Shown here: in pieces, positions 3,489 through 32,485 of the stretch
How positions within the stretch are numbered: position 1 is the first letter of the stretch
Layout: the number at the start of each line of letters is the position of its first letter
Virus record (IMG/VR): IMGVR_UViG_3300044625_001067
Coordinates: 124,001-188,000 of that record
Direction: 5' to 3' (one strand)
Length of the DNA: 64,000 nt
Program-made: the position numbers and the translations under genes
Notes under the pieces: model-generated
Seen by the model: only the letters and a program-made list of their open reading frames with translations
What the model was told of the DNA's origin: nothing
Database searches by the model: none

Positions 3489-3489
3489 T

Positions 3490-13806: not shown

Positions 13807-13881
13807 TCGGCTGCCTTAAGTAGGGAGGCTATTATAGCCCCCTAAGATGAAAGTAAACTCTTGGCTAAGGTAGCAAGGAAA

Positions 13882-14000: not shown

Positions 14001-14050
14001 TTTGCACCCTGAATTAAGTCAAGGAGCTAGAGTTCTCCGTAAAGAGAACA

Positions 14051-14132
14051 TACCCGCCGGGAGACTCGAACTCCCACGCCTTTCGGCACTAGTTCCTAAA
14101 ACTAGCGTATATACCAGTTTCACCAGGCGGGC
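14051..14132 (-). tRNA. trnL: tRNA-Leu (TAG)
   Basis: GCCCGCC/GGCGGGT, loop TT-TAG-GA. Confidence 0.94.
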
Positions 14133-14160
14133 TTGACTGTGATCCCTATGAAAGGGAAAG

Positions 14161-14232
14161 AGCGAACGAAGGGATTTGAACCCTCGACATTCTCGTTGGC
14201 AACGAGGTACTCTACCGCTGAGTTACGTTCGC
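14161..14232 (-). tRNA. trnG: tRNA-Gly (GCC)
   Basis: GCGAACG/CGTTCGC, loop TT-GCC-AA. Confidence 0.95.
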
Positions 14233-14274
14233 ATTGCTCCTTGGAGCAGTTTTCTTCTGCTTTTACAGAAGGTA

Positions 14275-14362
14275 CGGAGAGAACAGGAATCGAACCTGCG
14301 CAGGGGGTCTCCCCCCTGTAACCGTTTTCAAGACGGTCTCCTCGTCCAGCCGGACTCTCTCC
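14275..14362 (-). tRNA. trnS: tRNA-Ser (TGA), atypical D arm
   Basis: GGAGAGA/TCTCTCC, loop CT-TGA-AA, 7-bp variable stem with GAGA loop. Confidence 0.88.
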
Positions 14363-14411
14363 AGTTACCGTAGCACGGTAAGTTTTAGCTAGAAAACCGG
14401 AAGGTTTTCAA

Positions 14412-14570
14412 TGGGAAATGTTGGATTTGAACCAACGCTCTCTCAACTGATCAGGTTGTGAGCGTGCTGTTACAAAGGCGAAGGTCGGGGATCAATCCGC
14501 CATTCGACACTCGTACTGAAGCACTCACCTGGGTAATGTGCCCAGGGCTCTACCGCTGAGCTAATTTCCC
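14412..14570 (-). ncRNA. tRNA-like RNA B (~95-nt variable region)
   Basis: Acceptor GGGAAAT/ATTTCCC, canonical D and T arms, arm CCTGGG-CACATTA-CCCAGG, large structured insert. Confidence 0.8.
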
Positions 14571-14637
14571 GTTAACTCTGTTGACCGGAATTGAATCGGT
14601 CCCTGAACGTGCTGCCGTTTTTCTGCAAAGCAGAAAA

Positions 14638-14709
14638 TGGGGCATCTCGGATTCGAACCGAGGACTGACCGGTTAAAAGCCGGATACTCTACCGCTGAGT
14701 TAATGCCCC
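14638..14709 (-). tRNA. trnK: tRNA-Lys (TTT)
   Basis: GGGGCAT/ATGCCCC, loop CT-TTT-AA. Confidence 0.95.
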
Positions 14710-14792
14710 CCGTATTAAATTTTCAAGTTGCCTTTTGCTTTCGCAAAAGCGGGGAGGAGGTGAAGGCGAAGCCCTCTCTCAACCACCCCTTT

Positions 14793-14836
14793 AGTATAAC
14801 CGGTTTCGCCGAAAGGTGAAAGGGCGGGAAACCGCC
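14793..14836 (-). promoter_or_regulatory. promoter cassette heading a tRNA operon
   Basis: Dyad GGCGGGAAACCGCC, TTTCAC-17-TATACT, conserved leader. Confidence 0.85.
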
Positions 14837-14839
14837 GTA

Positions 14840-15064
14840 TCAAAGGGTGAACTCAAATACAACCTTGCGAACAAAGAAATCGTCAAGGTGCCCGTTGCCG
14901 TACATCCTGACGCAGTCCTGCAGCTTCGCAAGAATCTCGTCGTGGGTGGGAGCGGATGCCCCCTCTTCCAAAAGCTCGGTGAGTTCTCCAGCGATGGAGA
15001 CACAAAGTTCGTGCTCCTTACGAGCACTCAACCCTTTAAGGGTGCCGAAAGTTGCTTGAGCCAT
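14840..15064 (-). CDS. hypothetical protein, paralog of 8298..8537
   Basis: ATG 15064 (MAQATFGTLKGLSARKEHELCVSI). Confidence 0.8.
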   Translation of the reverse strand: MAQATFGTLKGLSARKEHELCVSIAGELTELLEEGASAPTHDEILAKLQDCVRMYGNGHLDDFFVRKVVFEFTL

Positions 15065-15095
15065 TTTGACTTGGAGGACCAACGGTAACAATTTA

Positions 15096-15161
15096 AGTTT
15101 AGCTGGTTTCACCGTGAAGCGAAAGGGTGGGAAACCGCCCCGGTTCGTTCGGTTAACTGAG
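15096..15161 (-). promoter_or_regulatory. repeated promoter cassette
   Basis: TTTCGC-17-TAAACT with dyads upstream. Confidence 0.7.
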
Positions 15162-15176
15162 CGAGTCACGGAGCAA

Positions 15177-15247
15177 AGCCCTGCCAGGGAATCGAACCCT
15201 GCTCTGCAGTTTACAAAACTGCTGCATCACCACAATGCTTGAAGGGC
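15177..15247 (-). tRNA. trnT: tRNA-Thr (TGT)
   Basis: Loop TT-TGT-AA; one acceptor mismatch. Confidence 0.85.
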
Positions 15248-15277
15248 ATTTTCCTTGTAGTTCTTCGGGGAGAACAA

Positions 15278-15366
15278 CGGAAGATGTGAGATTCGAACTC
15301 ACGGAGCTGCTTGCGCAGCTCAACGGTTTAGCAAACCGTCGCCTTCAACCACTCGGCCAATCTTCC
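15278..15366 (-). tRNA. trnS: tRNA-Ser (GCT)
   Basis: GGAAGAT/ATCTTCC, loop TT-GCT-AA, long variable arm. Confidence 0.94.
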
Positions 15367-15386
15367 AAAATTTCTCGTTAGAGAAA

Positions 15387-15459
15387 TTGCCCCAACCGGA
15401 TTCGAACCGGTATTTCCACCTTGAGAGGGTAGCGACCTAAGCCATTAGTCGATGAGGCC
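15387..15459 (-). tRNA. trnE: tRNA-Glu (CTC)
   Basis: Loop CT-CTC-AA, G1:A72 mismatch. Confidence 0.88.
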
Positions 15460-15496
15460 GTTTTCTGCGAAAAACAGAGAGTTTGCTTAAGCAAAG

Positions 15497-15569
15497 TAGG
15501 AATGACAGGATTCGAACCTGTGTATCTCGGTAATCGGCCGAAGGTATTAGGCCACTATACGACATTCTC
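15497..15569 (-). tRNA. trnI: atypical tRNA-Ile (GAT), C33/U37
   Basis: Loop CC-GAT-TA, weak acceptor end. Confidence 0.7.
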
Positions 15570-15630
15570 AGAAAACGAGCAGTTACGTATGATGCTCAGC
15601 ACAGGTTCCCCAGCAAAAGGGCTGAGAGGA

Positions 15631-15702
15631 TGGGAGCACTCGGGAACGACCCGAGGGCCTTTTCCGTGTCAAAGAAACGCTCTACCACTGAGCTATGCTC
15701 CC
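15631..15702 (-). tRNA. trnV: tRNA-Val (GAC), atypical T loop GTCGTTC
   Basis: GGGAGCA/TGCTCCC, loop TT-GAC-AC. Confidence 0.87.
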
Positions 15703-15813
15703 AACCGGAGCAGTCACGCTCCGTACCTAGTTTCCTATAATTGCCTACTCGTGTCATCGCGGAAGTTGACGAAACTTCTAGAACTTTCGGCTCAAGTGGT
15801 GTTAGGCACCTGA

Positions 15814-15968
15814 TTAAAGTGGAGAGACTCGAACTCCCATAGCAGGATTACGTCTAGCTGTCACCTGCACGGTGGTTGCAACCATGAGCTAGGAGGTTGC
15901 TATTTGTTCACAACCCCATCCGTATTGGCTGAATCCACACCGCCGTATACCAATTCCGGCACACTTTG
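15814..15968 (-). ncRNA. tRNA-like RNA C (Leu-type body, expanded anticodon and variable arms)
   Basis: AAAGTG/CACTTT acceptor, Leu-type D arm CCG-GAATTGGTATA-CGG, T arm GGGAG-TTCGAGT-CTCTC, ~65-nt insert closed by GGTG/CACC, GCAGG/CCTGC variable stem. Confidence 0.78.
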
Positions 15969-16027
15969 TTCTTAGCGTTTGAGGAGAACCTGAAGTAGGT
16001 CCCTCTTCTTTCTCTCTGTAAGAGAAA

Positions 16028-16100
16028 CTGGAGTGGGAGGGTTCGAACCTCCAACGAAGCGGTTAACAGCCGCACGATCTGCCAATTGATCTACACCCCA
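16028..16100 (-). tRNA. trnN: tRNA-Asn (GTT)
   Basis: TGGGGTG/CACTCCA, loop CT-GTT-AA. Confidence 0.92.
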
Positions 16101-16252
16101 TTGAGCCCTGCATTACGGCAGAGGGTACTAAGAAGCACTCCGGGGTCGCGAGCGTCCCCATACGAGTAGGAATCGTTACTGAAACCGGTTATTACTGTCC
16201 CTTAAGTTGCAAACCGACAACCTCGCTTAAGGAATTTTCGCGAGTGCGAAAA

Positions 16253-16325
16253 TGGAGACAATCGGAATTGAACCGATCACAAGTCGCTTGCGAAGCGTCC
16301 TCGCCACCCTGGAACATGTGCCCCC
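16253..16325 (-). tRNA. trnA: tRNA-Ala (CGC), atypical D arm
   Basis: G3:U70, loop TT-CGC-AA. Confidence 0.8.
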
Positions 16326-16431
16326 GTTTTCCTATCGGAAAACAAAAGTTAGCCGATAGGGGACAGAGCGTCTCACCTCTGCGAGGAACGTTTCAGTTCG
16401 TTTTCCCCTTAGGGAAGTTGCCCGAAGGCAA

Positions 16432-16504
16432 TGGGTTTGGTGGGATTCGAACCCACAACATACCGGGTAAGAGCCGGTTACTCTGCCAATTGAGCTACAA
16501 ACCC
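16432..16504 (-). tRNA. trnK: tRNA-Lys (CTT)
   Basis: GGGTTTG/CAAACCC, loop CT-CTT-AC. Confidence 0.94.
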
Positions 16505-16567
16505 GAACCCCAAGTTTAGAAAGCACCATCGCAGGTACTTGGGCAACCTTTTTCGCTAACGCGAAAA

Positions 16568-16640
16568 TGGGAACGGCCTGATTTGAACAGGCGGCCTATC
16601 GGTTATCAACCGATTGCTCTTACCGCTGAGCTACGCTCCC
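16568..16640 (-). tRNA. trnI: tRNA-Ile (GAT)
   Basis: GGGAGCG/CGTTCCC, loop TT-GAT-AA. Confidence 0.93.
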
Positions 16641-16715
16641 TTGGTACTAAATTGTCAAGTTGCCCCCCGGAAACCGGGTCAGTAAGGAAAGCGGAAGCTT
16701 TCCAACCACCCCTTT

Positions 16716-16759
16716 AGTATAACCGGTTTTGCCGTAGGGCGAAAGGGCGGTTTACCGCC
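16716..16759 (-). promoter_or_regulatory. promoter cassette heading a tRNA operon
   Basis: Dyad GGCGGTTTACCGCC, TTTCGC-17-TATACT, conserved leader. Confidence 0.85.
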
Positions 16760-16817
16760 CCCTTCACCCCTGGTCAACATTGAAGTATTCACTCAGGAAT
16801 GCTTGCGTAAGCAAACA

Positions 16818-16892
16818 TGGCGAGAGGCAGGATTTGAACCTGCGATCTCCAGCTTATGAGACTGGCGAGATACCGGGCTTCTCCACTCCGCT
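16818..16892 (-). tRNA. trnM: tRNA-Met (CAT)
   Basis: Loop CT-CAT-AA; acceptor needs a 1-nt bulge. Confidence 0.82.
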
Positions 16893-16948
16893 ATAAAGAC
16901 CTAGTATTTCAGTTCGGTTTTCGTTTTACGAAAAATGCCCAAGGGCAA

Positions 16949-17056
16949 TGGGTATGGACAGGATTCGAACCTGCAATGCCAGAGGCGACTGCTGTACTTA
17001 CAGCCCACTATTCCCAAGAACCGTGTACACAATTCCTGCTTCAGTGAGACATACCC
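16949..17056 (-). ncRNA. tRNA-like RNA D (Tyr-derived, expanded D arm, 4-nt anticodon loop)
   Basis: GGGTATG/CATACCC acceptor, T arm GCAGG-TTCGAAT-CCTGT, long hairpin in the D position, GCTGT-AAGT-ACAGC arm, GCC-TCT-GGC variable arm. Confidence 0.72.
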
Positions 17057-17079
17057 GTGAAGTTTCCGATAGGAAACAA

Positions 17080-17162
17080 TGGGAGCGGTAGGATTCGAAC
17101 CTACGAAGCATTGAGCAACCGGGTTACAGCCGGTCTCCTTTGACCACTCGGAGAACACTCCC
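17080..17162 (-). tRNA. trnY: tRNA-Tyr (GTA)
   Basis: GGGAGTG/CGCTCCC, loop CT-GTA-AC. Confidence 0.93.
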
Positions 17163-17169
17163 ATTTTGC

Positions 17170-17358
17170 TCTGCAGACACTGCTTTGGGTTGAGCCACCC
17201 CCTACTTTGTATCTCTAAAGTAGTAAAATAGGTTCTTCTAATTGCGGTTTTAACCGCATAACGAGAGAAGTTTTTGGATTTCGAAGAAACCTTTGCACCC
17301 CTTAAACTACCCAAGCATGGAGCTCAGGGGCTGAGTCGAACAGCCATTTCTCTCTTTT
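17170..17358 (-). ncRNA. possible circularly permuted tRNA-like/tmRNA-like element
   Basis: Orphan T arm GGCTG-TTCGACT-CAGCC followed by ...GAGCTCCA; downstream GGGGTGCAAAGGTTTC and several hairpins. Confidence 0.35.
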
Positions 17359-17377
17359 ATTTTCGCGTGAGCGAAAA

Positions 17378-17458
17378 TGGGTCAGGTGGGACTCGAACCC
17401 ACGGTGTTTGTATATCCGGTTAAAAGCCGGGACCTGTCGCCGCTAAGGTAACTGACCC
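17378..17458 (-). tRNA. trnK: atypical tRNA-Lys (TTT) with 12-nt variable loop
   Basis: GGGTCAG/CTGACCC, loop CT-TTT-AA, variable TATACAAACACC. Confidence 0.8.
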
Positions 17459-17533
17459 ATGGTGTTAAATTGTCAAGTTGCCTCCCGCAAGAGCGGAAGC
17501 GAGGCGGAAGCCGAGCTTCCCAACCACCCCTTT

Positions 17534-20632: not shown

Positions 20633-21238
20633 ATGGAACTAAAATCAACCCTTTCTGAGTCGTTCTTTCACCGGTTCTGCCCAGATCCCACGGTGATGTA
20701 CGATCTTGGAGAGATTTACGCAGAATTTAACGCCCGCTACTTCACTGGGAACTTACCACTTCTTCCTTGTAAGATTCGGACAGACGAAAACGGAGAAACT
20801 TGGTCGCGATACGACACCCTAAAGTGGGATGGTCGCATGGGTCGCAGAATTCTTGGCACATACAAAACGTCTGCACGACGTGGGTTCGGAACAATTCGCC
20901 TCTCTCGCGTAATTGCAGGTGACCCTGTAAAAACACGAAGCGTCCTCCTGCACGAGATGCTTCACAAGTATCTTGATCTTGAGCGCCGAGACGACGGTAT
21001 TAAGGGTCACGGTGAAAATTTCGTATCCGAAGCAAAGAGAATCAACGAACTTTGTGAAAGCACCAGAGTTAAGCACCGCATTCAATTCTACGACGAAGAG
21101 ATCACACAAGATCAACCGTTCGTCATACCCGAGCTTTTGGATGACAAAGTTAATTGTAGCAAAGATCTAGACATTGCTCGAAACATGCAGTCTGTGATGA
21201 GGGCCGCGTTCTCACAAAAATTCGAGTACTTTCAGTGA
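20633..21238 (+). CDS. SprT-like zinc metalloprotease domain protein
   Basis: FNARYF...IRLS...VLLHEMLH...GHGENF SprT pattern. Confidence 0.8.
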   Translation: MELKSTLSESFFHRFCPDPTVMYDLGEIYAEFNARYFTGNLPLLPCKIRTDENGETWSRYDTLKWDGRMGRRILGTYKTSARRGFGTIRLSRVIAGDPVKTRSVLLHEMLHKYLDLERRDDGIKGHGENFVSEAKRINELCESTRVKHRIQFYDEEITQDQPFVIPELLDDKVNCSKDLDIARNMQSVMRAAFSQKFEYFQ

Positions 21239-21738: not shown

Positions 21739-23226
21739 ATGACATTTGTGACAGAAAACTTAACGAAGAGTTCTAAAGCTGCTTCGAACGGAAATGGAAA
21801 ATGCAACGATAACTGTTCTGTGAGTGAAGCCGTTGTCTGTGATTTACGCTCTCGCCCGGAACCTCGTCGAATTGACCTCGACAAACTATACGAGTGCGAC
21901 CCGAAAGACTATATTGGCTATTTTGCCGACGAAACCTCTTACGACAACCTTATTCAAGAAGACTGCGACGTTTATGTGGGCGGAGTGAAAGTTGTTGCCT
22001 TTCGTAAGGCACTTTTTCCGAAGCTGCGCGATGGTTCGAAAGGTAGCCCGGAAACTTGGAAATACTTCCGCTGGGCAGCAAGAGACTTGTACTCAGACCA
22101 ACGAGGCCTAGTTGCTGGTAGAGAACTAACTACCCAACTCGAGATAAGGGTAACCAACGGTATTCTAAACTTCTTCAAGAAGGCGATGGCCGGTCAAGTC
22201 ACTGACGTGGAAGAGGCACTGAAAATTGCTTCTCTCTCCCCCGACATGTCAAAGCTCACTGTCCGAGTGAATGATGTTAAAAAGGACTTCCCAGAAATTG
22301 AGAAAGCTTTAGAATCTATCGAGAAGGAACTTCGCAAGAAAACGCTGAGCGAAGAAAGAAAGGTAGAGCTGAAGGAAGCGAAGGGTAGAGAACTTGCGAA
22401 GTGGTTCCCGACTTGGCTGTCTGAGACTTGGAGTGCATCTACGGATAAGGTTTCTGAGGCGAAACGTGCCGACGACAGGTATGTGGGAAAACAATACCGT
22501 TCAAACAAGTGCTATTCCAACGTGATTGGTGCTTTTGATAGGGGTGCACGTAACCCTTACGGTCGTTTGACCGCAACAACTGTAAAAGACTATGAGGGGT
22601 TCGTAAGCCACACGGATATTTATCAGACCGCGTGCTCTGCGCTCAAAGAGACCTTGAACACTCCGGAAAACCCTCGGTGGGACCTCCTTCACGAACGGTT
22701 CAGTAACGTGAAAGACCCGCACTATAACCTCTTCGGTACGGTGTTCACTGCCCTTACGTTAAACTGGAACTTCCGCTGTGCGATGCACTATGATGGAAAT
22801 AACTGCGAAGGTGGTATTGCCGTTCTTACTGCAATTACTCAGGGCGAATATGACGGTCACTACCTTGTGTTCCCTGAAATTCGTTGCGCTTTTGACCTTC
22901 GCGACGGAGATTTCATTGCAGGCGACAACCAGGGCTTGATTCACGGCAACACCGCGATGATCCCTAAAACTCCGGACGCTGAACGAGTTTCGTTCGTTTT
23001 CTATTCACGAGAGCGCATGACCGCTCTTGACGATATGGAGTGTGAGGAGTGCCGCCGAGATTTCATGCGATACGCAGCAGACAACCACAAGGAATACGGA
23101 AAGGGTCACAAGACATGGAATGGTGTCTGGAGCGGAATGTGGAAATCACCGGAATGGATGACGTATAAAGCCGAACACGGCATGGAACGTTGCTCAAATA
23201 CTAACTATTGGGGCACCGATAATTGA
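21739..23226 (+). CDS. 2OG-Fe(II) dioxygenase, TET/JBP family (copy 1)
   Basis: FTALTLNWNFRCAMHYD (HxD), IHGNT (distal His), ERVSFVFYSRE (2OG Arg), YLVFPE; matches the JBP/TET pattern. Confidence 0.85.
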   Translation: MTFVTENLTKSSKAASNGNGKCNDNCSVSEAVVCDLRSRPEPRRIDLDKLYECDPKDYIGYFADETSYDNLIQEDCDVYVGGVKVVAFRKALFPKLRDGSKGSPETWKYFRWAARDLYSDQRGLVAGRELTTQLEIRVTNGILNFFKKAMAGQVTDVEEALKIASLSPDMSKLTVRVNDVKKDFPEIEKALESIEKELRKKTLSEERKVELKEAKGRELAKWFPTWLSETWSASTDKVSEAKRADDRYVGKQYRSNKCYSNVIGAFDRGARNPYGRLTATTVKDYEGFVSHTDIYQTACSALKETLNTPENPRWDLLHERFSNVKDPHYNLFGTVFTALTLNWNFRCAMHYDGNNCEGGIAVLTAITQGEYDGHYLVFPEIRCAFDLRDGDFIAGDNQGLIHGNTAMIPKTPDAERVSFVFYSRERMTALDDMECEECRRDFMRYAADNHKEYGKGHKTWNGVWSGMWKSPEWMTYKAEHGMERCSNTNYWGTDN

Positions 23227-23281
23227 GTCCTAAAGACTACCAAAGTGGCATTTAACGAACGAAAACACAGGATTACTAACT

Positions 23282-23617
23282 ATGGACACAAACAAACAGC
23301 TTAACGGTGGCGATGCGGAGCGGCAAGTTGCCTCGGGGAGTATTGAACCCAGTGAAGCAACAACCGCCATTACAGTGGAACTCCCGGTAAACTTCGCTGA
23401 GGCTTTTCGAGCACTTGCTGAACGAGAGGAGTTGTCGGAGAGTAACCTTATTGTACGATCGCTCGGGCTCTACTCCGTTGCATCTCAAGCCGAGAGTGAA
23501 GGGTACGGACTGACGTTTACTCGTATTGAGGGAACCAACGACCTGACCGCCAAGGAAGCAATTCGCGTCGAAGATGAGCCCGCGTCTAACTTGATCCTTC
23601 CTGGAAATAGGCAATGA
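23282..23617 (+). CDS. ribbon-helix-helix-like protein
   Basis: ITVELPVNFAEAFRALAERE..SESNLIVRSLGLY; similar to the C-terminus of 1535..2704. Confidence 0.6.
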   Translation: MDTNKQLNGGDAERQVASGSIEPSEATTAITVELPVNFAEAFRALAEREELSESNLIVRSLGLYSVASQAESEGYGLTFTRIEGTNDLTAKEAIRVEDEPASNLILPGNRQ

Positions 23618-25101
23618 TCCGAGAGGTAATATCAAAAGAGTTACAGTCAAGGGTCGAACCCTTACAGATTGATAGGGGTGCTCTTGAAAACTGCCCTCGC
23701 AGTGAATATATTGGACAATTCCCTAAGGCGACAGACTATGACCGCGTAATCGATGAAGACTGTGATGTTTACGTCTCAGGTGTAAAAGTCTTGTCCTTCA
23801 GGAAAGCTCTTTTCCCACTTCTTTCCGAGGGTTCTTCCAAACAGAAGGAGACTTGGGACTTTTTCCGAGCAGCTTCAAAAGAAGTTTACGGCACCCAAAG
23901 AGGTGTCGTTGCGGGCACAGAGTTTACAACTCGCCCCGAATCACGCTTAACCAAAGGACAGGTTGCCTTTTTCGCTAGTGCTTCAGTGGGCTTGATCACA
24001 ACGCTCGCTCAAGCGCGAGAAACCCTAGAAAGTTCGGATGAGCTCACCAGCAAGACTCTGAAAATCAAATACGTGAAGAAAGACTACCCCGAACTTGCGG
24101 AGAAAATGAAACCGTTAGAGGCGGAAATTCGCACACTGAACTCCGGAGACCCGAAACCAGAAAGTCTGAGAAACCAGAGAAGAGAACAGCTTTGGGGTTG
24201 GTTCGAACCTTGGTTACTAGAAGTTTGGCTGCCCTCAGAAAACAAAGTAGAAGAAGTTAAAAAAGTTCTAAACACTTACATAAGTTCCCAGTTGAACTTT
24301 AACCACTGCTACAGTAACGTCCTTGGGGCGATTGACCGTGGGGCTAGATTTCCCTACGGTCGTTTAAGCGGAACCACTCAGAGATACTATGAGCAGTTCT
24401 CAAAATACAGAGACATTTATTACACAGCCTGCGAAGGTTTCAGGTACAATTTTCCGGAGACTTGGGTCAAAGTCAAGGAAGTGATTTCGAGGGCTAAAGA
24501 CCCTAACTACAACTTGTTCGGCACTGCCTTTACGAGTGTAACCGTAAATTTCAATTTCAAGACTGCCTACCACGTTGACAAGAACAATTTGAAAGGGGGT
24601 ATGTCCGTCTTAACTGCTTTTACAAAAGGTGTTTATGAAGGTCACTACTTAGTGTTTCCCGAAGTGAGATTGGCCTTCAATTTAAGAGACGGGGACTTCA
24701 TCGTAGGGGATACTCAAACTTTGCTCCATGGTAACAGCCCCATGACAAAACTTACTGAAGATGCTGAGCGGGTTTCTCTGGTTTTCTACTCACGAGAGAA
24801 CATGAACCGATTGGACGATCTTGAGTGCGAAGAATGCCGAAAACAGTTCATGAAGTTTTCACTTCAGTCTCTGAAAGAACGGGGCAAAGATCATAAAGAT
24901 TGGAGAGGTGTTTGGCAAGGTATGTGGACTTCTCAAGAATGGCTAGACTTTAGAAAAGAAAGAAACTTGGAACACTGTTCAAACTCTAATTGGCAGCTTT
25001 CCTCGCCGTACGAGAACGAAGTTACGAAAGAGGTGAAGTTGTTCAAGGATGATCCAGGCGAAGGGTGGAAACTCGTACAAGTGTTTACACAAGATCGGTA
25101 A
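23614..25101 (+). CDS. 2OG-Fe(II) dioxygenase, TET/JBP family (copy 2)
   Basis: [33 protein letters not shown]; collinear with copy 1 along its length. Confidence 0.85.
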
Positions 25102-25157
25102 ACCGCCCTGAAGCCTTCGGCTTCCCCCTTGTTTCTGCTTCGCATAAATGCTATGAT
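25094..25157 (+). promoter_or_regulatory. repeated promoter cassette
   Basis: TTGTTT-17-TATGAT; distal dyad ATCGGTAAACCGCC. Confidence 0.75.
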
Positions 25158-25162
25158 TGTTT

Positions 25163-25760
25163 TATGGAAATCTACTTCAGCACAGACGTTGAGACCGACG
25201 GACCGATCCCCGGACCTAACAGCATGCTTTCGCTCGGGTCGGCTGCGTTTTCCCCTGAAGGAAAACTCCTAAGCACCTTCTCGGTGAACCTAGAGACCCT
25301 CCCCGGAGCCGAACCGGACCCCACTACCCAAGCGTGGTGGGAGTCTCACCCGGAGGCCTACAGAGCCTCTCGGGAGCATACCCGGAGTCCGGACCAAGCC
25401 ATGTTGCTCTTCTCGGGTTGGGTTGGCCAGACCGTGAAAGCTAACAGTAACCAAGATTCAGGTGGCCGGAAAGCCTTGCCCGTATTCGTGGGTTTTCCTG
25501 CAGGGTTTGACTTTCTTTTCGTGTATTGGTACCTTATTCGGTTCACTGGACAGTCCCCATTTAGCTTCTCGGCGATTGACGGTAAGACCTATGCTATGGC
25601 CTTGCTCAAAAGAGGATACCGGGAGTCCACAAAACGAAACTACCCAAAGGAGTGGTTTCCCATCGAAAACAAGCATACTCACATCGCTGTAGAGGATGCC
25701 ATTGAACAAGGTCGTATTTTCTGCAATATGCTTCGATCCAATCTTAACATCCTACCTTAG
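25163..25760 (+). CDS. DEDDh-type 3'-5' exonuclease
   Basis: [22 protein letters not shown] motifs; ATG 25163 after promoter. Confidence 0.85.
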
Positions 25761-25939
25761 TGACTAACAAAGTTAAAGATTACTGCGAAAAACTTAGCTT
25801 GTCCCTGAAGTTAAGGGGAGAGGGAAACGAGGACGCGGAGGAGGCCTTGCTCGACGAGCTTGACCTTCTGTGGCTGAAGTTGTCAAGAGAAGAGGCCCAG
25901 TGGGTTAATGCCAATATACTGTCGTTGTTACCTAACTAA
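25760..25939 (+). CDS. small hypothetical protein (59 aa)
   Basis: Manual translation; GTG overlaps the upstream stop. Confidence 0.55.
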   Translation: MTNKVKDYCEKLSLSLKLRGEGNEDAEEALLDELDLLWLKLSREEAQWVNANILSLLPN

Positions 25940-25948
25940 TTACCCACC

Positions 25949-26713
25949 GTGACGAAAAATCCTACTTTCCTACTCCAGTCCGGAGGACCACTACAAATCG
26001 AAAAGGTTGCGTGTAGTTTCTCCTGTTACCCTGTCCAATATTGCTCGTTTTATGATCTGTCGAAGTTAGACCCTAAAGGTTTCATGGCTACATTGATTCC
26101 TGTGGGATCGGTGGAATTTGTTCAAGCTTACAGTGAACACGCAGGTGTTGTGCTACCTGAAGACTTTTCTTACGGACACGGTGGGGAACTGGAAAAGTAC
26201 CTTATGAGGTCCGTTCGACAAGGAGTGTACGGTGAAGCAACCTTGGAAGACTTTGTGAAGCCAACCGCAATAAAGTTGTTTACCGGGGACATCAAGAGAG
26301 AGCTCGAACTGAAGATACCTGGACTAATTTCTGATAACACTTCAGTGTGGATCTCTCAGGCTGTGCTTTTTGAGTCGGAATTTAGGTTCTACATTCACGA
26401 CTTCATTGGGGGCGGTAAAATTCAGGGGTGGTCGCGGTATGACGACAAGCCCGTAAGAAACCCAGAACCCGACTTCGGCCTGATTGAAGAGATTATGGGT
26501 GTGCTAGAGGCAAATATTGCGCCCGGTGCTTACACGATTGACATCGGCTGGAGGCCTGACCTGAATCGGTACTGCCTAGTTGAACTTAACGATGCGTGGT
26601 CACTGGGATTTTACGAAAATAGTGACCCGCAATCAAACCCTCCAACTCGACAGCAGTACGCTGACATGCTGGTGTCTCGCTGGAGACAAATTACCTTTTG
26701 CAACCTAGTGTAA
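25949..26713 (+). CDS. ATP-grasp domain protein (DUF4343/R2K-like)
   Basis: FVKPTAIKLFTG, ESEFRFYI, YTIDIG, LVELNDAWSLGFY. Confidence 0.75.
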   Translation: MTKNPTFLLQSGGPLQIEKVACSFSCYPVQYCSFYDLSKLDPKGFMATLIPVGSVEFVQAYSEHAGVVLPEDFSYGHGGELEKYLMRSVRQGVYGEATLEDFVKPTAIKLFTGDIKRELELKIPGLISDNTSVWISQAVLFESEFRFYIHDFIGGGKIQGWSRYDDKPVRNPEPDFGLIEEIMGVLEANIAPGAYTIDIGWRPDLNRYCLVELNDAWSLGFYENSDPQSNPPTRQQYADMLVSRWRQITFCNLV

Positions 26714-26801
26714 CCACTGGATAACACAGTCGGAGATAAGAGGACGCGGCAAACGTCTACTCTTGACGCTCCGACAACAGTCACATCAACTGCACTCAAA
26801 T

Positions 26802-27629
26802 ATGGACTATCAGATTGCCATCCCAACTTACGGAAGGCCCGATGGAGTGAAGAAACTCACTCTAAATTACCTTGAAAAAACAGACATTAATTGTTCCCAC
26901 GTGACTTTGTTCGTGGCAAACGATGAAGAGAAGGAAATTTACCAGAGTTCAAACCCTACATACAATATCGTTGTTGGTGAAAAGGGTTTGACAAAACAAC
27001 GTCACTTCATCTCTAACTTTTACGACAAAGGGACTCCTGTTTTTTCGTTCGACGACGACGTTAGCGCCGTTGAGGAACTTGAGCTCTTAAAAGACCTTGA
27101 GGGGACTCAGAAGCCACTTGACCACCCGTGTCGCCTGAAAACCGTGGTGGAACTCTCGGATCTTATCGATCGCGGCTTCCGAATGTCCAAGCGGCGCAAT
27201 ATTGGCCTGTTCGGTTTCTATGCCGTTCGCAACAAGGGTTTTCTTCACCCAAAGGTGACTGTGGGACTCAAGTTCATTATGGGCCACGCATTCGGTTTCT
27301 ACGCAGGCGACCCAGCCTTTGATCTAATCGCTGAGTACAGTATGAAGGACGATTACTTCTTGTCTCTGTACCACACTGTTAATGGAAACGGAACACTGCG
27401 ATTCGACAACATCTGTGTGAAAGCTAAACAGCACACAGGCGGTGGCGGAACCTGCGAAGACCTGGAGCGAAAGCTTCAGATTAATAACCAAACCGTAGAG
27501 AAACTTTGTGCTGAGTTTCCGGACCTCGCGAGTCCAAAGAGCCGTCGAACAAAGGATGAGTGGCTTTCCCGGTACTCTGAAATCCGCCTCAAAACAATCA
27601 CAAACGAGACAATCTCAGTGCTTAACTGA
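26802..27629 (+). CDS. TET-associated (GREB1-like) GT-A glycosyltransferase
   Basis: IAIPTYGR, GLTKQR, FSFDDD (DxD), KDDYFLSL, GGGG motifs; ATG 26802. Confidence 0.82.
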   Translation: MDYQIAIPTYGRPDGVKKLTLNYLEKTDINCSHVTLFVANDEEKEIYQSSNPTYNIVVGEKGLTKQRHFISNFYDKGTPVFSFDDDVSAVEELELLKDLEGTQKPLDHPCRLKTVVELSDLIDRGFRMSKRRNIGLFGFYAVRNKGFLHPKVTVGLKFIMGHAFGFYAGDPAFDLIAEYSMKDDYFLSLYHTVNGNGTLRFDNICVKAKQHTGGGGTCEDLERKLQINNQTVEKLCAEFPDLASPKSRRTKDEWLSRYSEIRLKTITNETISVLN

Positions 27630-27636
27630 GCACCAA

Positions 27637-27679
27637 GGCGGTTTTCCGCCCTTTACTGTAAGCTCCTCTCCCCTATGTT
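27637..27679 (+). promoter_or_regulatory. repeated promoter cassette
   Basis: Dyad GGCGGTTTTCCGCC, TTTACT-16-TATGTT. Confidence 0.65.
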
Positions 27680-27700
27680 TAGAACAGCTTCCGGCTACCA

Positions 27701-28057
27701 ATGATTCCCGACCCAAAGAAAACCATAGTTTTCGATGTTGACGACACCATCCTCACAACAGAAAACCGCGATTACGAAAACTCTCTACCGAAGATGGAAG
27801 TAATTGTGGGTATGCGAGCAATGAAGGACGCAGGGTGGACGATCATCTTGAATACAGCGAGGGGAATGGGTCGTTCAGACGGTGACATCGAAAGTGTTAG
27901 ACAAGAAGTTATCGAGGAAATCGAAAAGTTCTGCACTAAATTCGATGTACCCTACGATACCATCTTGGTTGGAAAACCTTGGGCGGCATACTACGTAGAC
28001 GACAAAGCAATGACTCCCGCTCAGTTCTCCGCAAAATATAAGGAAATCGCACAATGA
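27701..28057 (+). CDS. HAD phosphatase (capsule-biosynthesis phosphatase-like)
   Basis: VFDVDDTI, TARGM, GKP, YYVDDKA. Confidence 0.85.
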   Translation: MIPDPKKTIVFDVDDTILTTENRDYENSLPKMEVIVGMRAMKDAGWTIILNTARGMGRSDGDIESVRQEVIEEIEKFCTKFDVPYDTILVGKPWAAYYVDDKAMTPAQFSAKYKEIAQ

Positions 28058-28767
28058 AGAACGCACTCATTCTTGCTGCCGGTCGTAGTACTCGGTTTGG
28101 CCGAAACAAACTTGAGGAAAAGTTTGACGGGGTGTCACTTCCTTACCTGGCTGCCAAGTTCGCTCTTGAAAACGGTGCGGAAAACATCTATCTGACGCTC
28201 TCGCGCTCGGCGATTAAGACCGACGGGACTCGCATTTACCACCCTGTTCTAGATGAAGTTTCCAAGATTTGCGACCCGATTGTTCGTTTCCAGAGTGAGG
28301 AAACTTACGGACCAGGCGCTGCGATCACTACGTGGGCAGGCGTGATCAACGGCCCACTCACTGTGCTGTTTGGGGATAATTACTACCACGGAACGATCCC
28401 CCCTGCCGAACGAGTTTTACTTGGCTCTGACCTTGAGAACTCAGTGTGGTTTTCATACCTTCATAAGTCACTAAATCCACGAAATCTTCAACTCGCCACA
28501 GTAATCGACAACTATGTGATTGAAAAACCACACGGACAACTCGAAGGCCGTTACTTCTGTGGTTTTGTCCGTTTCCCTGCGGGATACCTTGACACCATTG
28601 GTGACCTTCGCAAGAGCGACCGTGGCGAGGTTGAAATTACGGATATGATAAACATGGCGGAGCATCGTCAAGCAGTATCACTTTCTTCCATGGGTGTGAT
28701 ATGGGGAGACTTAACTTACGAGGCGGATTGCGCTCGCATTCGGGAGCTTGTTAGTGAAGGGAAGTAG
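28054..28767 (+). CDS. sugar-1-phosphate nucleotidyltransferase (RmlA-like)
   Basis: ILAAGRSTRF, GDN, IEKP, SDRGEVEITD. Confidence 0.87.
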   Translation: MKNALILAAGRSTRFGRNKLEEKFDGVSLPYLAAKFALENGAENIYLTLSRSAIKTDGTRIYHPVLDEVSKICDPIVRFQSEETYGPGAAITTWAGVINGPLTVLFGDNYYHGTIPPAERVLLGSDLENSVWFSYLHKSLNPRNLQLATVIDNYVIEKPHGQLEGRYFCGFVRFPAGYLDTIGDLRKSDRGEVEITDMINMAEHRQAVSLSSMGVIWGDLTYEADCARIRELVSEGK

Positions 28768-29500
28768 TGGGGCCACCCTGGATTTCTCTGGGGATTTCAT
28801 ACGGAAAAAGTGTAAGGATGCCGGTGAGCAGTGCGAGTGGTTTCGCATTGCTTCTCGGTATACCTTGGCACCAAGTGTTCGCCTCCCGCAAACAATCTGT
28901 GTGTCGGACTCAGACTACGACATTGAGTTTATTGAAGGTGTTTGTGGAACACAAATTGAATCTACACGTTTGATTGACACTTTGGTAGACCAGGTCTTCC
29001 TTTGGTCTAAGCTCCCTGCGTCAAGACACACGGACTGGGGGTCTTACAAAGAGCGTCTTCACTTAGAGCACGTTTCTCTGACAGACAGCGAGATAGTTCG
29101 TCGAACTTTCGATTTCCTCGACGAAATAGTTCCACTACCTTCCTCCTTCTCGCATGGTGACCTAACGCTTGAAAACATCATTGTAGAAAATAACGGGGGA
29201 ATAGTTCTGATCGACCCTAATTTCAAGACTAATTTGTTTCAGTCTTACGTTCTCGACTTAGGTAAATTGCTACAGTCTGTCCACAGCGATTATCACCGGT
29301 TGTTCAAATCACACCCAGGATGTGACCCTGCGCCTCTGTGCGCCCACTTGAGACAACGGCTAGGCAAACCCTTATGGACTCAGGCGCTGGCCGCTGAGAT
29401 ATCGCACGTGATCCGCCTGCGCAAGTACCGCCCTTCCGCCCAGTGGCCGACGGTCGACCGGCTGTTGGGGCAGCTGCTGGCTGAAGCCCATGGATGTTAA
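28748..29500 (+). CDS. APH/choline-kinase-fold phosphotransferase (putative sugar kinase)
   Basis: SHGDLTLENII and LIDP motifs; coupled to the nucleotidyltransferase. Confidence 0.82.
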   Translation: MLVKGSSGATLDFSGDFIRKKCKDAGEQCEWFRIASRYTLAPSVRLPQTICVSDSDYDIEFIEGVCGTQIESTRLIDTLVDQVFLWSKLPASRHTDWGSYKERLHLEHVSLTDSEIVRRTFDFLDEIVPLPSSFSHGDLTLENIIVENNGGIVLIDPNFKTNLFQSYVLDLGKLLQSVHSDYHRLFKSHPGCDPAPLCAHLRQRLGKPLWTQALAAEISHVIRLRKYRPSAQWPTVDRLLGQLLAEAHGC

Positions 29501-29602
29501 CCTTACCCTCGCGGTGCGGTCCACCCACTTTCGACAACTTAATAGCATTATTATTACGACCCCAAGCTTGAATACCGTACTCCGCAACGACGAAACTAAG
29601 CA

Positions 29603-30121
29603 ATGTCAAACTCCCAAGACCTAATTGAGAAGCTTAAAGACCAGATAGCGTTCCTAACCGCTGAGCTCGAACGGGCCCAACGAAAGTCAAATTCCCTTTG
29701 GAGCCAAATTCAAGGTGCATTTCTCCAGGAAGGCAACGACGAAGAGAACGCAGACTTTTGGGCCGACAAAATTTCGCAGATTTTATCTGAGTGGGTTCAC
29801 ACTCAGCGAACGAGCCTGTCCCAGAAGATAGTAGAAACAGGAACAATGCCCCCCTATACCGACTGTCTCAACCACCTTGTGGTCAGTCTTTCGCCCCCTG
29901 GGTCAGCTCCCCCGAGCCTTCCCCCTGAGTTCACAGAGCTTACCAACACTCCCTCACCTGGACCAACTTTCAGTCCAACAGGCTTGGAAGCACCGGCTTA
30001 CGGGGGCCTGTCCGCAGACGCGCAAGTGGGACCGCCGAAAGAGCGCAAGATCGGGGTGCCCAAGGCTATTCCCGGTGCGGTACCATTGCCGTTGCCTCCA
30101 CTTTCAGAGGGTTCCCCTTAA
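29603..30121 (+). CDS. hypothetical protein with Pro-rich C-terminus
   Basis: 172 aa ORF. Confidence 0.7.
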   Translation: MSNSQDLIEKLKDQIAFLTAELERAQRKSNSLWSQIQGAFLQEGNDEENADFWADKISQILSEWVHTQRTSLSQKIVETGTMPPYTDCLNHLVVSLSPPGSAPPSLPPEFTELTNTPSPGPTFSPTGLEAPAYGGLSADAQVGPPKERKIGVPKAIPGAVPLPLPPLSEGSP

Positions 30122-31032: not shown

Positions 31033-31575
31033 ATGGCAACTATTTACAAACCACCGGCACAGCTACCCCCTTTCTCATCGAGGCTCAGTGTATTTCTTGC
31101 AGGTTCAATAGAAATGGGCTCTGCACCCGACTGGCAAGCTGACCTCGAACGTAGTCTTGCTGACATTGACATTGACATTTACAATCCGCGACGCGACGAT
31201 TGGGACCCAACTTGGGTTCAAAGCGCCGATAACCCGGTGTTTCGAGAGCAGGTTGAGTGGGAGCTTGATGCCCTAGAGATGGCTGGCATGGTTGTCATGT
31301 ATCTGGCACCGGGTACCATTAGTCCTGTTTCTTTGCTCGAACTTGGCTTCGTCGCCGGATTCGGTTTCTACGCTGTCAGAAAAACGGTTGTGTGTTGCCC
31401 AGAGGGGTTCCACCGCAAGGGTAACGTTGACATTTTCTGTGGCCAATACGGAATTCCCCAGGTTTCAAGTCTTGACGGGCTTGAACTGGCTATACGACGA
31501 GAAAATGCAAGGGTACAGAAACTCAAGTCTCATGGGAATCGTGGGAGCATTGAGACGAGAAACCCTGGAGAGTAA
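31033..31575 (+). CDS. nucleoside 2-deoxyribosyltransferase-like protein
   Basis: VFLAGSIEMG, NPRRDDWD, QVEWELDAL, SPVSLLELG. Confidence 0.85.
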   Translation: MATIYKPPAQLPPFSSRLSVFLAGSIEMGSAPDWQADLERSLADIDIDIYNPRRDDWDPTWVQSADNPVFREQVEWELDALEMAGMVVMYLAPGTISPVSLLELGFVAGFGFYAVRKTVVCCPEGFHRKGNVDIFCGQYGIPQVSSLDGLELAIRRENARVQKLKSHGNRGSIETRNPGE

Positions 31576-31577
31576 GC

Positions 31578-31937
31578 ATGACCGGCACCACCTTTAACTA
31601 TCCACCCCATTTACCCGACTTCGATGACATGGACCCGGACGGTGCCATTGAAGTTTTGTTAGGGGAAGACGAGGACGGGTACCAACATACTCGTTTCGAG
31701 AGCGTGGCCTACTACCGGAACACAGGAAAGACCCACCCTTGGCGTCACACCAAAGACTGGGCTCCTCGCTCAAACTACACCGAGGAGGACTTTACCTGGG
31801 CTTTGTCGAGAATTTTGAACACAGTTACCTGTTCTCGTGACCTTCGTAGCAAGGGCCTTGGGCTCACCGACGACGAATGCCGACGCATATACTCAATGCG
31901 GGACCGGGCTAGGGAGGTAGCGAAGCACGATGGGTGA
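31578..31937 (+). CDS. hypothetical protein
   Basis: 119 aa ORF. Confidence 0.7.
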   Translation: MTGTTFNYPPHLPDFDDMDPDGAIEVLLGEDEDGYQHTRFESVAYYRNTGKTHPWRHTKDWAPRSNYTEEDFTWALSRILNTVTCSRDLRSKGLGLTDDECRRIYSMRDRAREVAKHDG

Positions 31938-31993
31938 CCGGTTGCTCCGGGGCGGTTTCCCGCCTTGTTTTCTCGAAGAGAAAACGCTATAGT
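31929..31993 (+). promoter_or_regulatory. repeated promoter cassette
   Basis: Dyad GGCGGTTTCCCGCC, TTGTTT-17-TATAGT, spacer dyad TTTTCTC-GAA-GAGAAAA. Confidence 0.88.
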
Positions 31994-32023
31994 AGTTACA
32001 AGACAAACGCTCCCGAGAAAGAC

Positions 32024-32485
32024 ATGAAAGGACAACTCCTCAATAAAATGCTGGTACTGGCGACCAACTCCCACGCCGATCAGTACGACAAGGGTGGCAA
32101 CCCTTACATTTTGCACCCGCTCAAGGTGATGCATTACCTGAAGACCGACGATGTTGAGCTTCAGTGCATTGCGCTCGGTCACGACATTATTGAAGACACC
32201 AAGGTCACTTACGCAGATTTACGTGATCAGGGGTTCACTGCCCGAATTATCGAAGGCATTCGATGCCTAACGAAAGCACCGGGGGAAACCTACGAAGAGT
32301 ACAAGTTCCGTGTTTTCTCAAACGAAGACGCCATGAGAGTGAAGCTCTGTGACTTGAGGCACAATACTGACGTTCGGCGTCTGAAAGGTGTCACCGATGG
32401 GGACATTGCTCGAACTGTAAAGTACCATGTTTTCTACCTGGAGATTATGGCCCGGCTACCGAAAATTGACGAAGGTGATTCTTGA
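32024..32485 (+). CDS. HD-domain protein, RelA/SpoT hydrolase (Mesh1/SAH)-like
   Basis: HADQYDKGGNPYILHP, ALGHDIIEDT, VKLCDLRHN; ATG 32024. Confidence 0.85.
   Translation: MKGQLLNKMLVLATNSHADQYDKGGNPYILHPLKVMHYLKTDDVELQCIALGHDIIEDTKVTYADLRDQGFTARIIEGIRCLTKAPGETYEEYKFRVFSNEDAMRVKLCDLRHNTDVRRLKGVTDGDIARTVKYHVFYLEIMARLPKIDEGDS

What the first reader, a model, noticed from the sequence alone, without database searches (positions are those of the whole stretch)
21739..25101. Two tandem, equal-length (495 aa) TET/JBP paralogs with diverged active-site neighbourhoods
Both keep HxD...H...R and a large helical insertion, but they differ next to the metal ligands (WNFRCAMHYDGNN versus [13 protein letters not shown]). 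Retention of both suggests division of labour: T versus 5mC, different sequence contexts, or successive oxidation steps (inference).
Basis: partly seen in the sequence, partly recalled or inferred. Interest (0 to 1): 0.62.

Follow-up and report, generated by a model that had tools for sequence, protein, structure and literature searches.

The report
Core and accessory phage TET/JBP dioxygenases
A 277-kb lake-water phage carries two diverged TET/JBP DNA-base dioxygenases beside a sugar-attachment gene set: one is the conserved core enzyme, and the other is an optional, laterally exchanged extra copy missing from most of the nearest relatives.

Summary
ORFs 21739-23226 (TET-1) and 23614-25101 (TET-2) are 495-aa paralogs, 49% identical (E 1e-170). 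Both pass Pfam Tet_JBP, keep HxD...H...R, fold confidently (pLDDT 93/95) and match CcTet, NgTET1, CMD1 and TET2.

The equal length is a coincidence. TET-1 has an N-terminal extension and TET-2 a C-terminal beta unit. A 111-aa RHH-like ORF lies between them.

The 98%-complete genome has no C5-methyltransferase, no ThyA-family enzyme and no ParB. A TET-associated glycosyltransferase and a sugar-activation set lie downstream. Related phages carry AADT and 5hmU-kinase-like genes there instead. Thymine, oxidised to 5hmU and then glycosylated, is therefore the likely target.

TET-1 is the ortholog of the single TET in S-CBWM1-like phages. TET-2 belongs to a derived clade with a long stem and fixed changes beside the metal site (G353K, N397T, W343F, E357K). 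It is under purifying selection (dN/dS about 0.07).

TET-2 is also dispensable. It is cleanly absent from 6 of 9 near-identical contigs, truncated in another, and its dS shows recent lateral exchange.

Division of labour is plausible, most likely a different thymine context. T versus 5mC is unlikely.

The parts
21739..23226 (+). TET-1: core TET/JBP (5mYOX) Fe(II)/2OG dioxygenase, 495 aa. Metal and 2OG residues are H350 (22786-22788), D352 (22792-22794), H402 (22942-22944) and R416 (22984-22986). It has an N-terminal Cys-containing extension (C22, C26, C34, C53).
   Evidence: Pfam PF12851 at 50.6 bits. AF2 pLDDT 93.1. Foldseek top hits are CcTet, NgTET1, CMD1 and TET2. It is the ortholog of the single TET of S-CBWM1 (57.8% identity; trees). 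It is intact in every relative examined.
23282..23617 (+). Small ORF of 111 aa with a weak ribbon-helix-helix resemblance. Its stop overlaps the TET-2 start codon.
   Evidence: Pfam RHH_1 E 0.041, below the cut-off. It is conserved in relatives with or without TET-2. It is absent from L026, L027 and S-CBWM1.
23614..25101 (+). TET-2: accessory TET/JBP paralog, 495 aa. Key residues are H320 (24571-24573), D322 (24577-24579), H372 (24727-24729) and R386 (24769-24771). Clade-fixed changes are K323, T367, F313 and K327. It has a C-terminal three-strand unit at about residues 461-495.
   Evidence: Pfam PF12851 at 67.9 bits. AF2 pLDDT 94.7. Foldseek gives the same TET hits. It lies in a monophyletic clade with a long stem. 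dN/dS is 0.04-0.07. It is absent from 6 of 9 near relatives.
25110..25124 (+). Terminator-like hairpin just after the TET-2 stop.
   Evidence: Consensus scan. The TET-2-less relatives have a comparable hairpin directly after the small ORF.
20633..21238 (+). SprT-like protein, the conserved left neighbour of the TET locus in all related phages.
   Evidence: Pfam PF10263 E 1.4e-9. Synteny is shown.
25164..25760 (+). DEDD-type exonuclease (Rv2179c-like). It is a backbone gene, not specific to the modification pathway.
   Evidence: Pfam PF16473 E 1.1e-5, just under the cut-off; phrog_255 exonuclease. It occurs with R2K and p172 without any TET in L038.
25949..26713 (+). R2K-clade ATP-grasp protein, a backbone gene.
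   Evidence: Pfam R2K_3 E 2.7e-19 and R2K_2 E 2.5e-18. It is present without TET-2 in six near relatives and without any TET in L038 and L042.
26763..27629 (+). TET-associated glycosyltransferase (TAGT), the predicted consumer of the hydroxymethyl base.
   Evidence: Pfam PF20691 E 4.9e-10, over the cut-off; phrog_842. It is 62% identical to S-CBWM1 gp010.
27701..29500 (+). Sugar-activation set of three genes: a HAD-IIIA phosphatase-like protein (27701-28057), a sugar-1-phosphate nucleotidyltransferase-like protein (28054-28767) and a protein-kinase-fold (APH-like) kinase (28748-29500).
   Evidence: Pfam, PHROG and NCBIfam hits, mostly below the curated cut-offs. The three genes are syntenic with S-CBWM1 gp011-gp013.

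Best explanation
The locus is a post-replicative pyrimidine hypermodification pathway of a freshwater phage of 277 kb or more that resembles cyanophage S-CBWM1.

TET-1 is the core 5-methylpyrimidine dioxygenase. It most likely oxidises thymine in phage DNA to 5-hydroxymethyluracil. The downstream TET-associated glycosyltransferase then glycosylates this base, using an NDP-sugar supplied by the phage kinase, nucleotidyltransferase and phosphatase. The product would be a base-J-like base.

TET-2 is a second enzyme that should be catalytically competent. It belongs to an old, derived paralog clade with a remodelled and more basic surround of the metal centre, a strongly diverged helical insertion and a C-terminal beta unit. 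It is an optional add-on that is gained, lost and swapped between related phages. Its most likely role is to oxidise thymines in sequence contexts or DNA forms that TET-1 serves poorly, raising the density or range of modified sites.

Shown: paralogy, fold, catalytic residues, context, phylogeny, selection, presence/absence and lateral exchange. Inferred: the substrate (T), the product, and the difference in site preference.
For: Family and fold.

Thymine rather than 5mC:
- The own genome (98% complete) has no PF00145 and no PF00303 match, but does encode ThyX.
- The complete S-CBWM1 genome has no PF00145 match either.
- Orthologous loci in related phages carry ADDT/AADT (PF18724), Ploopntkinase3 (PF18751) and GATase_6 next to the same TETs. 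PMC13229309 names this as the thymidine-hypermodification machinery linked to phage T-dioxygenases, and reports that only 6% of 5mYOX pathways co-occur with a C5-MT.

Glycosylation: TAGT plus the sugar-activation genes, syntenic with S-CBWM1.

TET-1 is the core enzyme: single-copy phages carry the TET-1 type, and TET-1 is intact everywhere.

TET-2 is functional but accessory:
- All 28 family-invariant residues are kept.
- dN/dS is 0.04-0.07.
- The clade spans 58-94% identity.
- It is absent from 6 of 9 near relatives, all with one homologous empty site.
- dS between the window and L009/L010/L013 is 0.45-0.73 for TET-2, against 1.4-4.8 for TET-1, SprT and Exo.

Differentiation:
- Clade-fixed substitutions lie beside HxD and the distal His.
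- Identity is 30% in the helical insertion against 66% in the core, and core net charge is -1 against -6.
- PMC13229309 shows that phage T-dioxygenases differ in site preference (YTY against NTR) and that the variable insertion is essential.
- Tandem TET pairs arose independently at least twice (L021).

Contigs from RNA libraries lie on both genes.
Against: - No biochemical result exists for this family.
- PMC13229309 notes that some ParB-less Clade C1 enzymes showed no activity on T or 5mC in E. coli.
- The base-contact inference rests on a weak profile alignment to TET2 (E 0.0046) and on residue roles recalled from the TET2 literature.
- The models' coordinates could not be inspected, so the positions of the TET-2-specific changes relative to DNA are not shown.
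- The frequent loss of TET-2 is equally compatible with redundancy.
- RNA-library contigs do not prove transcription.
Confidence: 0.5

Rival explanations
1. Redundant or dosage copy. TET-2 does the same reaction on the same sites as TET-1 and merely raises activity. It is on its way to being lost.
For: TET-2 is absent from 6 of 9 near relatives. It is truncated in L009 and possibly frameshifted in L010 and L013. The base-contact-equivalent residues are identical in both paralogs.
Against: The clade is old (members down to 58% identity). It is under strong purifying selection (dN/dS about 0.07). It has a long stem with substitutions fixed in 20-21 of 21 members next to the metal site. It is being re-acquired by lateral exchange. 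The frameshifts in L010 and L013 lie in homopolymer runs and may be sequencing errors.
Confidence: 0.2
2. Successive oxidation. TET-1 makes 5hmU and TET-2 takes it on to 5fU or 5caU (or the reverse), giving a second chemical handle, possibly for the neighbouring R2K ATP-grasp ligase.
For: Every TET-2-bearing locus examined also has R2K within a few genes. PMC13229309 reports that phage T-dioxygenases can oxidise iteratively.
Against: R2K persists unchanged in the six TET-2-less near relatives. It also occurs with Exo and p172 but no TET at all in L038 and L042. The co-occurrence is therefore explained by a shared backbone. The T1372/Y1902-equivalent pair (T340/Y422) is invariant in both paralogs. 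L024 carries a TET-2-type gene as its only TET in the 15 kb held.
Confidence: 0.08
3. Different base. TET-2 acts on 5mC installed on phage DNA by host methyltransferases, or on RNA m5U/m5C, while TET-1 acts on T.
For: Some phage 5mYOXs have dual T and 5mC activity (PMC8256090). A 34-gene tRNA array and RNA-repair-type genes lie near the locus, both here and in S-CBWM1.
Against: There is no C5-methyltransferase in the genome. The residues aligned to the TET2 base contacts are the same in both paralogs and across both clades. The neighbouring AADT and 5hmU-kinase-like genes in relatives point to DNA thymine.
Confidence: 0.08
4. Heteromer. TET-1 and TET-2 work as one complex with asymmetric roles.
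For: The only support is the tandem arrangement and shared operon-like context.
Against: TET-1 occurs alone in most near relatives and in S-CBWM1. TET-2 pairs with a different (FAR-clade) TET in L023 and L025, and stands alone in L024. No complex prediction was run.
Confidence: 0.05

Closest known systems
Phage thymine dioxygenases (5mYOX Clades C1/C2; O'Toole et al. 2026, PMC13229309)
   Same: Both are Pfam Tet_JBP enzymes of phages with no adjacent C5-methyltransferase. Both are linked to glycosyltransferases or to AADT, P-loop kinase and GATase genes, and both have an essential variable insertion. The ParB-independent type also has no ParB in the genome.
   Different: These proteins are much longer (about 480-495 aa), with an N-terminal domain and an insertion of about 110 residues. 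They come as a core plus an accessory paralog pair. I found no mention of tandem paralogs in that paper or in Burke 2021.
Phage 5mC dioxygenases TET43/TET14 with C5-MT and glycosyltransferases (Burke et al. 2021, PMC8256090)
   Same: The logic is the same: post-replicative oxidation of a 5-methylpyrimidine followed by glycosylation.
   Different: Those enzymes depend on an adjacent phage C5-methyltransferase. None exists in this 98%-complete genome.
Synechococcus phage S-CBWM1 gp009 cluster (NC_048106)
   Same: The order SprT, hypothetical, TET, TAGT, HAD, nucleotidyltransferase, kinase is syntenic. Its TET is 57.8% identical to TET-1, and a tRNA array lies nearby.
   Different: It has a single TET and lacks TET-2, the small ORF, Exo and R2K. 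The TET is annotated 'putative SNF2 DNA repair protein', which looks like a mis-annotation.
Kinetoplastid base J pathway (JBP1/JBP2 plus the glucosyltransferase JGT)
   Same: Two paralogous thymine hydroxylases act on DNA, followed by glycosylation of 5hmU (established knowledge).
   Different: JBP1 and JBP2 differ by accessory domains (a J-binding domain and an SNF2 domain), which are absent here. No direct sequence or structure comparison with the JBP catalytic domain was possible with these tools.
Eukaryotic TETs with solved structures (CcTet, NgTET1, CMD1, human TET2)
   Same: They are the best structural matches for both models (Foldseek E 1e-7 to 5e-10). HxD, the distal His, the 2OG Arg, and the Thr and Tyr of the active-site scaffold align.
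   Different: Sequence identity is 10-22%. The position of TET2 H1904 is an invariant Arg here (R424/R394). The insertions and termini are unrelated.

Membership tests
TET/JBP (Pfam PF12851, 5mYOX superfamily) | Profile match above the curated gathering score | tested here: met
   TET-1 scores 50.6 bits and TET-2 67.9 bits against a 34.9 cut-off. A six-frame search of the genome finds exactly these two copies.
TET/JBP (Pfam PF12851, 5mYOX superfamily) | Fe(II) triad HxD...H and 2-oxoglutarate-binding Arg | tested here: met
   H350/D352/H402/R416 in TET-1 and H320/D322/H372/R386 in TET-2. The His, Asp and His are invariant in 69 homologs. They align with TET2 H1382/D1384/H1881/R1896.
TET/JBP (Pfam PF12851, 5mYOX superfamily) | Double-stranded beta-helix fold closest to solved TET structures | tested here: met
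   AF2 pLDDT is 93.1 and 94.7. The top Foldseek PDB hits are CcTet, NgTET1, CMD1 and TET2, ahead of FTO and AlkB.
TET/JBP (Pfam PF12851, 5mYOX superfamily) | Oxidation of a 5-methylpyrimidine in nucleic acid | not testable with these tools
   This needs expression and LC-MS or in vitro assays.
Phage T-dioxygenase pathways (O'Toole 2026) | No cognate C5-methyltransferase | tested here: met
   PF00145 is absent from the own genome, from complete S-CBWM1 and from three partial relatives. PF00303 is also absent.
Phage T-dioxygenase pathways (O'Toole 2026) | Linkage to 5hmU-consuming enzymes (AADT, P-loop 5hmU kinase, GATase) or to glycosyltransferases | tested here: met
   TAGT is in the window. 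ADDT, Ploopntkinase3 and GATase_6 lie beside orthologous TETs in L009, L010, L023 and L026-L029.
Phage T-dioxygenase pathways (O'Toole 2026), ParB-dependent subclass | Co-occurring ParB-like activator | tested here: not met
   PF02195 has no match in the genome. No ParB appears in the gene lists of the related loci.
Phage T-dioxygenase pathways (O'Toole 2026) | Placement in Clade C1 or C2 by phylogeny with the characterised 5mYOX enzymes | not tested
   The characterised sequences are not held as text and may not be typed in.
Phage 5mC-dioxygenase pathways (Burke 2021, Clades A/B) | Adjacent phage C5-methyltransferase supplying 5mC | tested here: not met
Base-J-like glycosylated hmU system | Thymine hydroxylase plus a glycosyltransferase acting on 5hmU in DNA | tested here: inconclusive
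   Both gene types are present and syntenic. The base and the sugar are unknown.

The most novel reading that the evidence does not exclude
TET-2 is not merely a second thymine hydroxylase with another site preference. It makes a chemically different mark, for example by further oxidising 5hmU to 5fU or 5caU, or by oxidising host-installed 5mC. On this reading, TET-2-plus and TET-2-minus strains of one phage population carry different modified bases. That would be a laterally exchangeable 'epigenetic serotype' cassette.
Probability: 0.12. Interest if true: 0.75.

Novelty: new variant of a known kind. Interest (0 to 1): 0.45.

Why it matters
Phage TET/JBP enzymes and their link to thymine hypermodification are already described. 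Three things here are not in the papers I could read.

1. A distinct, long (about 490 aa) TET lineage splits into a core enzyme and an old accessory clade with fixed changes around the metal site.
2. The accessory copy is a presence/absence polymorphism within one natural lake population, and it moves between phage lineages independently of its flanks.
3. The same TET backbone is coupled to interchangeable downstream chemistries: a glycosyltransferase cassette or an amino-acid-transferase and kinase cassette.

The naturally occurring plus and minus haplotypes offer a ready-made comparison for finding what determines site choice in DNA thymine dioxygenases. They also give two related enzymes for testing specificity swaps. 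A 2021 survey noted no TET/JBP in the cultured jumbo phages it covered (PMC7824862); this 277-kb virus has two.

Tried and rejected
1. TET-2 functionally coupled to the R2K ATP-grasp (5caU amide idea). This was attractive at first because all ten TET-2 loci have R2K. It was rejected as evidence after an R2K-seeded scan found R2K without TET-2 in six near relatives, and with no TET at all in L038 and L042.

2. Pseudogenisation of TET-2 in L010 and L013. The breaks are single-base deletions in A or T runs and may be sequencing errors. Only the L009 truncation and the clean absences are counted.

3. Near-identical DNA in cultured phages: none found by megablast.

4. Matching the contigs to those studied by O'Toole et al.: no supplementary text is held.

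5. Literature on ATP-grasp enzymes in hmU hypermodification: no paper found. One search failed on a disallowed term.

6. A profile search against PDB sequences gave only a weak TET2 match (E 0.0046). Fold searches were needed for a clear answer.

7. NCBIfam gives no name for either TET.

8. Not done. The costly exhaustive protein search was not run, because the family was already settled. Complex prediction was not run, because I make no binding claim. The AF2 models' coordinates could not be read, so the TET-2-specific residues were not mapped in three dimensions.

No alternative genetic code was used.
Full report
**Observation.**
- The window is bases 124001-188000 of a 277,244-bp IMG/VR virus record estimated 98% complete.
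- ORFs 21739-23226 (TET-1, P0001) and 23614-25101 (TET-2, P0002) are both 495 aa. They are 49% identical over 463 aa, E 1e-170.
- Both exceed the Pfam Tet_JBP gathering score and match PHROG 24024 over their full length. They are the only Tet_JBP matches in the genome.
- The quoted motifs and HxD...H...R are present.
- The genes are separated by a 111-aa ORF with weak ribbon-helix-helix resemblance. Its stop overlaps the TET-2 start.
- The identical length is fortuitous. The alignment is offset by 26 residues. TET-1 has a partly disordered N-terminal extension with a CxxxC...C motif. TET-2 has a C-terminal three-strand unit.

**Family and structure.**
- An alignment of 69 homologs has 28 invariant columns, and both paralogs keep all of them.
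- A profile of the family aligns weakly but sensibly with human TET2. The equivalences are H350/D352 = H1382/D1384, N355 = N1387, H402 = H1881, R416 = R1896, Y422 = Y1902 and R424 = H1904.
- AF2 models are confident: pLDDT 93.1 and 94.7.
- Foldseek ranks CcTet, NgTET1, CMD1 and TET2 above FTO and AlkB for both models.
- The helical insertion spans about residues 140-250. It is the most diverged part, 30% identical against 66% in the catalytic core.

**Context and likely substrate.**
- Downstream lie a DEDD exonuclease, an R2K ATP-grasp protein and a TET-associated glycosyltransferase. After these come a HAD phosphatase-like protein, a sugar-1-phosphate nucleotidyltransferase-like protein and an APH-like kinase.
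- The genome has no C5-cytosine methyltransferase, no ThyA-family enzyme and no ParB. It does have ThyX.
- The closest cultured phage, Synechococcus phage S-CBWM1, has the syntenic set SprT, hypothetical, TET, TAGT, HAD, nucleotidyltransferase, kinase, with a single TET. It has no C5-methyltransferase either.
- In more distant relatives the same TETs sit beside GATase_6, ADDT/AADT (PF18724) and a Ploopntkinase3 kinase (PF18751).
- O'Toole et al. (PMC13229309) link exactly these genes to phage thymine dioxygenases. They report that only 6% of 5mYOX pathways have a C5-MT.
- I therefore infer T to 5hmU on DNA, followed by glycosylation.

**Phylogeny.**
- A word search returned 72 homologs.
- Two trees (LG+C20 PMSF, and LG+G4 with extra rows) agree.
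- TET-2 and 20-21 relatives form a clade with SH-aLRT 100 and a long stem of 0.5-0.8 changes per site. This clade sits in an unresolved trio with the TET-1 clade and the S-CBWM1 clade.
- Single-copy phages carry the TET-1 type. The S-CBWM1 TET is 57.8% identical to TET-1 and 43.7% to TET-2.
- In other contigs TET-2 is paired with a TET of a different clade (L023, L025). In L024 it is the only TET in the 15 kb held.
- A 249-kb contig (L021) has an independent tandem duplication in the outgroup clade.
- The TET-2 clade has fixed changes beside the metal ligands:
  - W343F;
  - the x of HxD changed to V/L;
  - G/A353K in 21/21;
  - C356L;
  - E357 changed to K/H/R;
  - N397T in 21/21;
  - G399T;
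  - P409K.
- The residues aligned with the TET2 base contacts and with the Thr-Tyr scaffold are unchanged.

**Population genetics.**
- TET-1 and TET-2 are both under purifying selection, with dN/dS 0.04-0.07.
- A scan seeded with the R2K protein, which is blind to TET-2, found nine near-identical contigs. Three carry TET-2 and six lack exactly window 23612-25163. All six share one homologous empty site. All keep TET-1 (96-98% aa), the small ORF, Exo, R2K and the glycosylation set.
- In L009, codons of about 11-103 of TET-2 are replaced by unrelated sequence. L010 and L013 have homopolymer frameshifts that may be errors.
- Synonymous divergence between the window and L009/L010/L013 is 0.45-0.73 for TET-2. 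It is 1.9-2.6 for TET-1 and 1.4-4.8 for SprT and Exo. Against L007 the order reverses, 0.56 against 0.30. TET-2 therefore has its own, laterally exchanged history.

**Reads.**
- The stretch occurs in many lake-water metagenomes.
- An independent 1738-nt contig spans both TET-2 junctions without a difference.
- Contigs from RNA libraries lie on TET-1 and on three parts of TET-2.
- One RNA-library contig carries the empty-site sequence, so both haplotypes coexist.
- Contigs cannot prove transcription.

**Interpretation.**
- TET-1 is the core oxidase of a thymine hypermodification pathway.
- TET-2 is a competent, selected but dispensable accessory oxidase. Its differences lie around, not in, the catalytic and base-contact positions, and in the variable insertion.
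- Characterised phage T-dioxygenases differ in site preference (YTY against NTR) and reach only partial modification. Given this, a complementary sequence or DNA-form preference is the most economical reading.
- The idea that TET-2 feeds the ATP-grasp enzyme was tested and weakened.
- Redundancy, stepwise oxidation, another base and a heteromer remain as rivals.

**Novelty.**
- The enzymes are new members of a known superfamily in a known type of pathway.
- The core-plus-accessory paralog structure, its strain-level polymorphism and its lateral exchange were not mentioned in the papers read.
- The swapping of downstream cassettes between R2K and the conserved 172-aa gene was likewise not mentioned.

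**Limits.** There is no biochemistry. The clades of Burke and O'Toole could not be matched. The residue roles in TET2 come from my own knowledge of that literature. The model coordinates could not be inspected.

Noticed in passing
window 660-17459, minus strand: An array of 34 tRNA genes covering most amino acids lies just upstream of the modification locus. S-CBWM1 also has a tRNA array near its TET cluster.
   Followed up: partly
window 23282-23617; L009 about 7706-7990: An RHH-like small ORF sits between the two TETs and is translationally coupled to TET-2. In L009 a different RHH-like stretch has replaced the first 100 or so codons of TET-2. Whether either regulates or targets the TETs is unknown.
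   Followed up: partly
window 25164-30121; L009, L010, L023, L026, L027, L038: Exo, R2K and a 172-aa gene form a conserved backbone. Between R2K and the 172-aa gene, related phages carry either the TAGT, HAD, nucleotidyltransferase and kinase cassette, or the GATase, p319, AADT and P-loop kinase cassette, or nothing (L038). This looks like a swap site for DNA-modification modules.
   Followed up: partly
L021 4315-5679 and 7440-8849; L043: A 249-kb viral contig has an independent tandem pair of distant TETs next to GATase and AADT genes. Unlike the window's genome, it has a C5-methyltransferase elsewhere on the contig.
   Followed up: partly
L004 3729-5165 (S-CBWM1 gp009); L005 6953-8281 (Cr30); Stenotrophomonas phage DLP_6: The TET homologs of cultured phages are annotated 'putative SNF2 DNA repair protein'. 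They have a Tet_JBP domain and no SNF2 domain was seen. This is probably an annotation carried over from JBP2.
   Followed up: no
window 50955-53885: A family A DNA polymerase whose exonuclease domain matches the mitochondrial (pol-gamma-type) DNApol_Exo model at E 1e-61.
   Followed up: no
window 42529-43635: A 368-aa protein with a strong DUF1517 match (E 1e-54). From memory, this family is mainly found in cyanobacteria and plastids. It is a possible host-derived gene and fits a cyanobacterial host.
   Followed up: no
window 31033-32485: A nucleoside 2-deoxyribosyltransferase-like gene (E 2e-32) and a weak HD-domain gene lie a few genes after the modification cluster. They may belong to nucleotide-pool handling.
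   Followed up: no
window 11906-13066, minus strand: A 386-aa ORF with weak protein-kinase and ABC1-like matches sits inside the tRNA array.
   Followed up: no
whole record (277,244 bp): A 2021 survey of jumbo phages stated that TET/JBP hydroxylases were absent from those characterised (PMC7824862). This uncultured virus of 277 kb or more carries two.
   Followed up: partly
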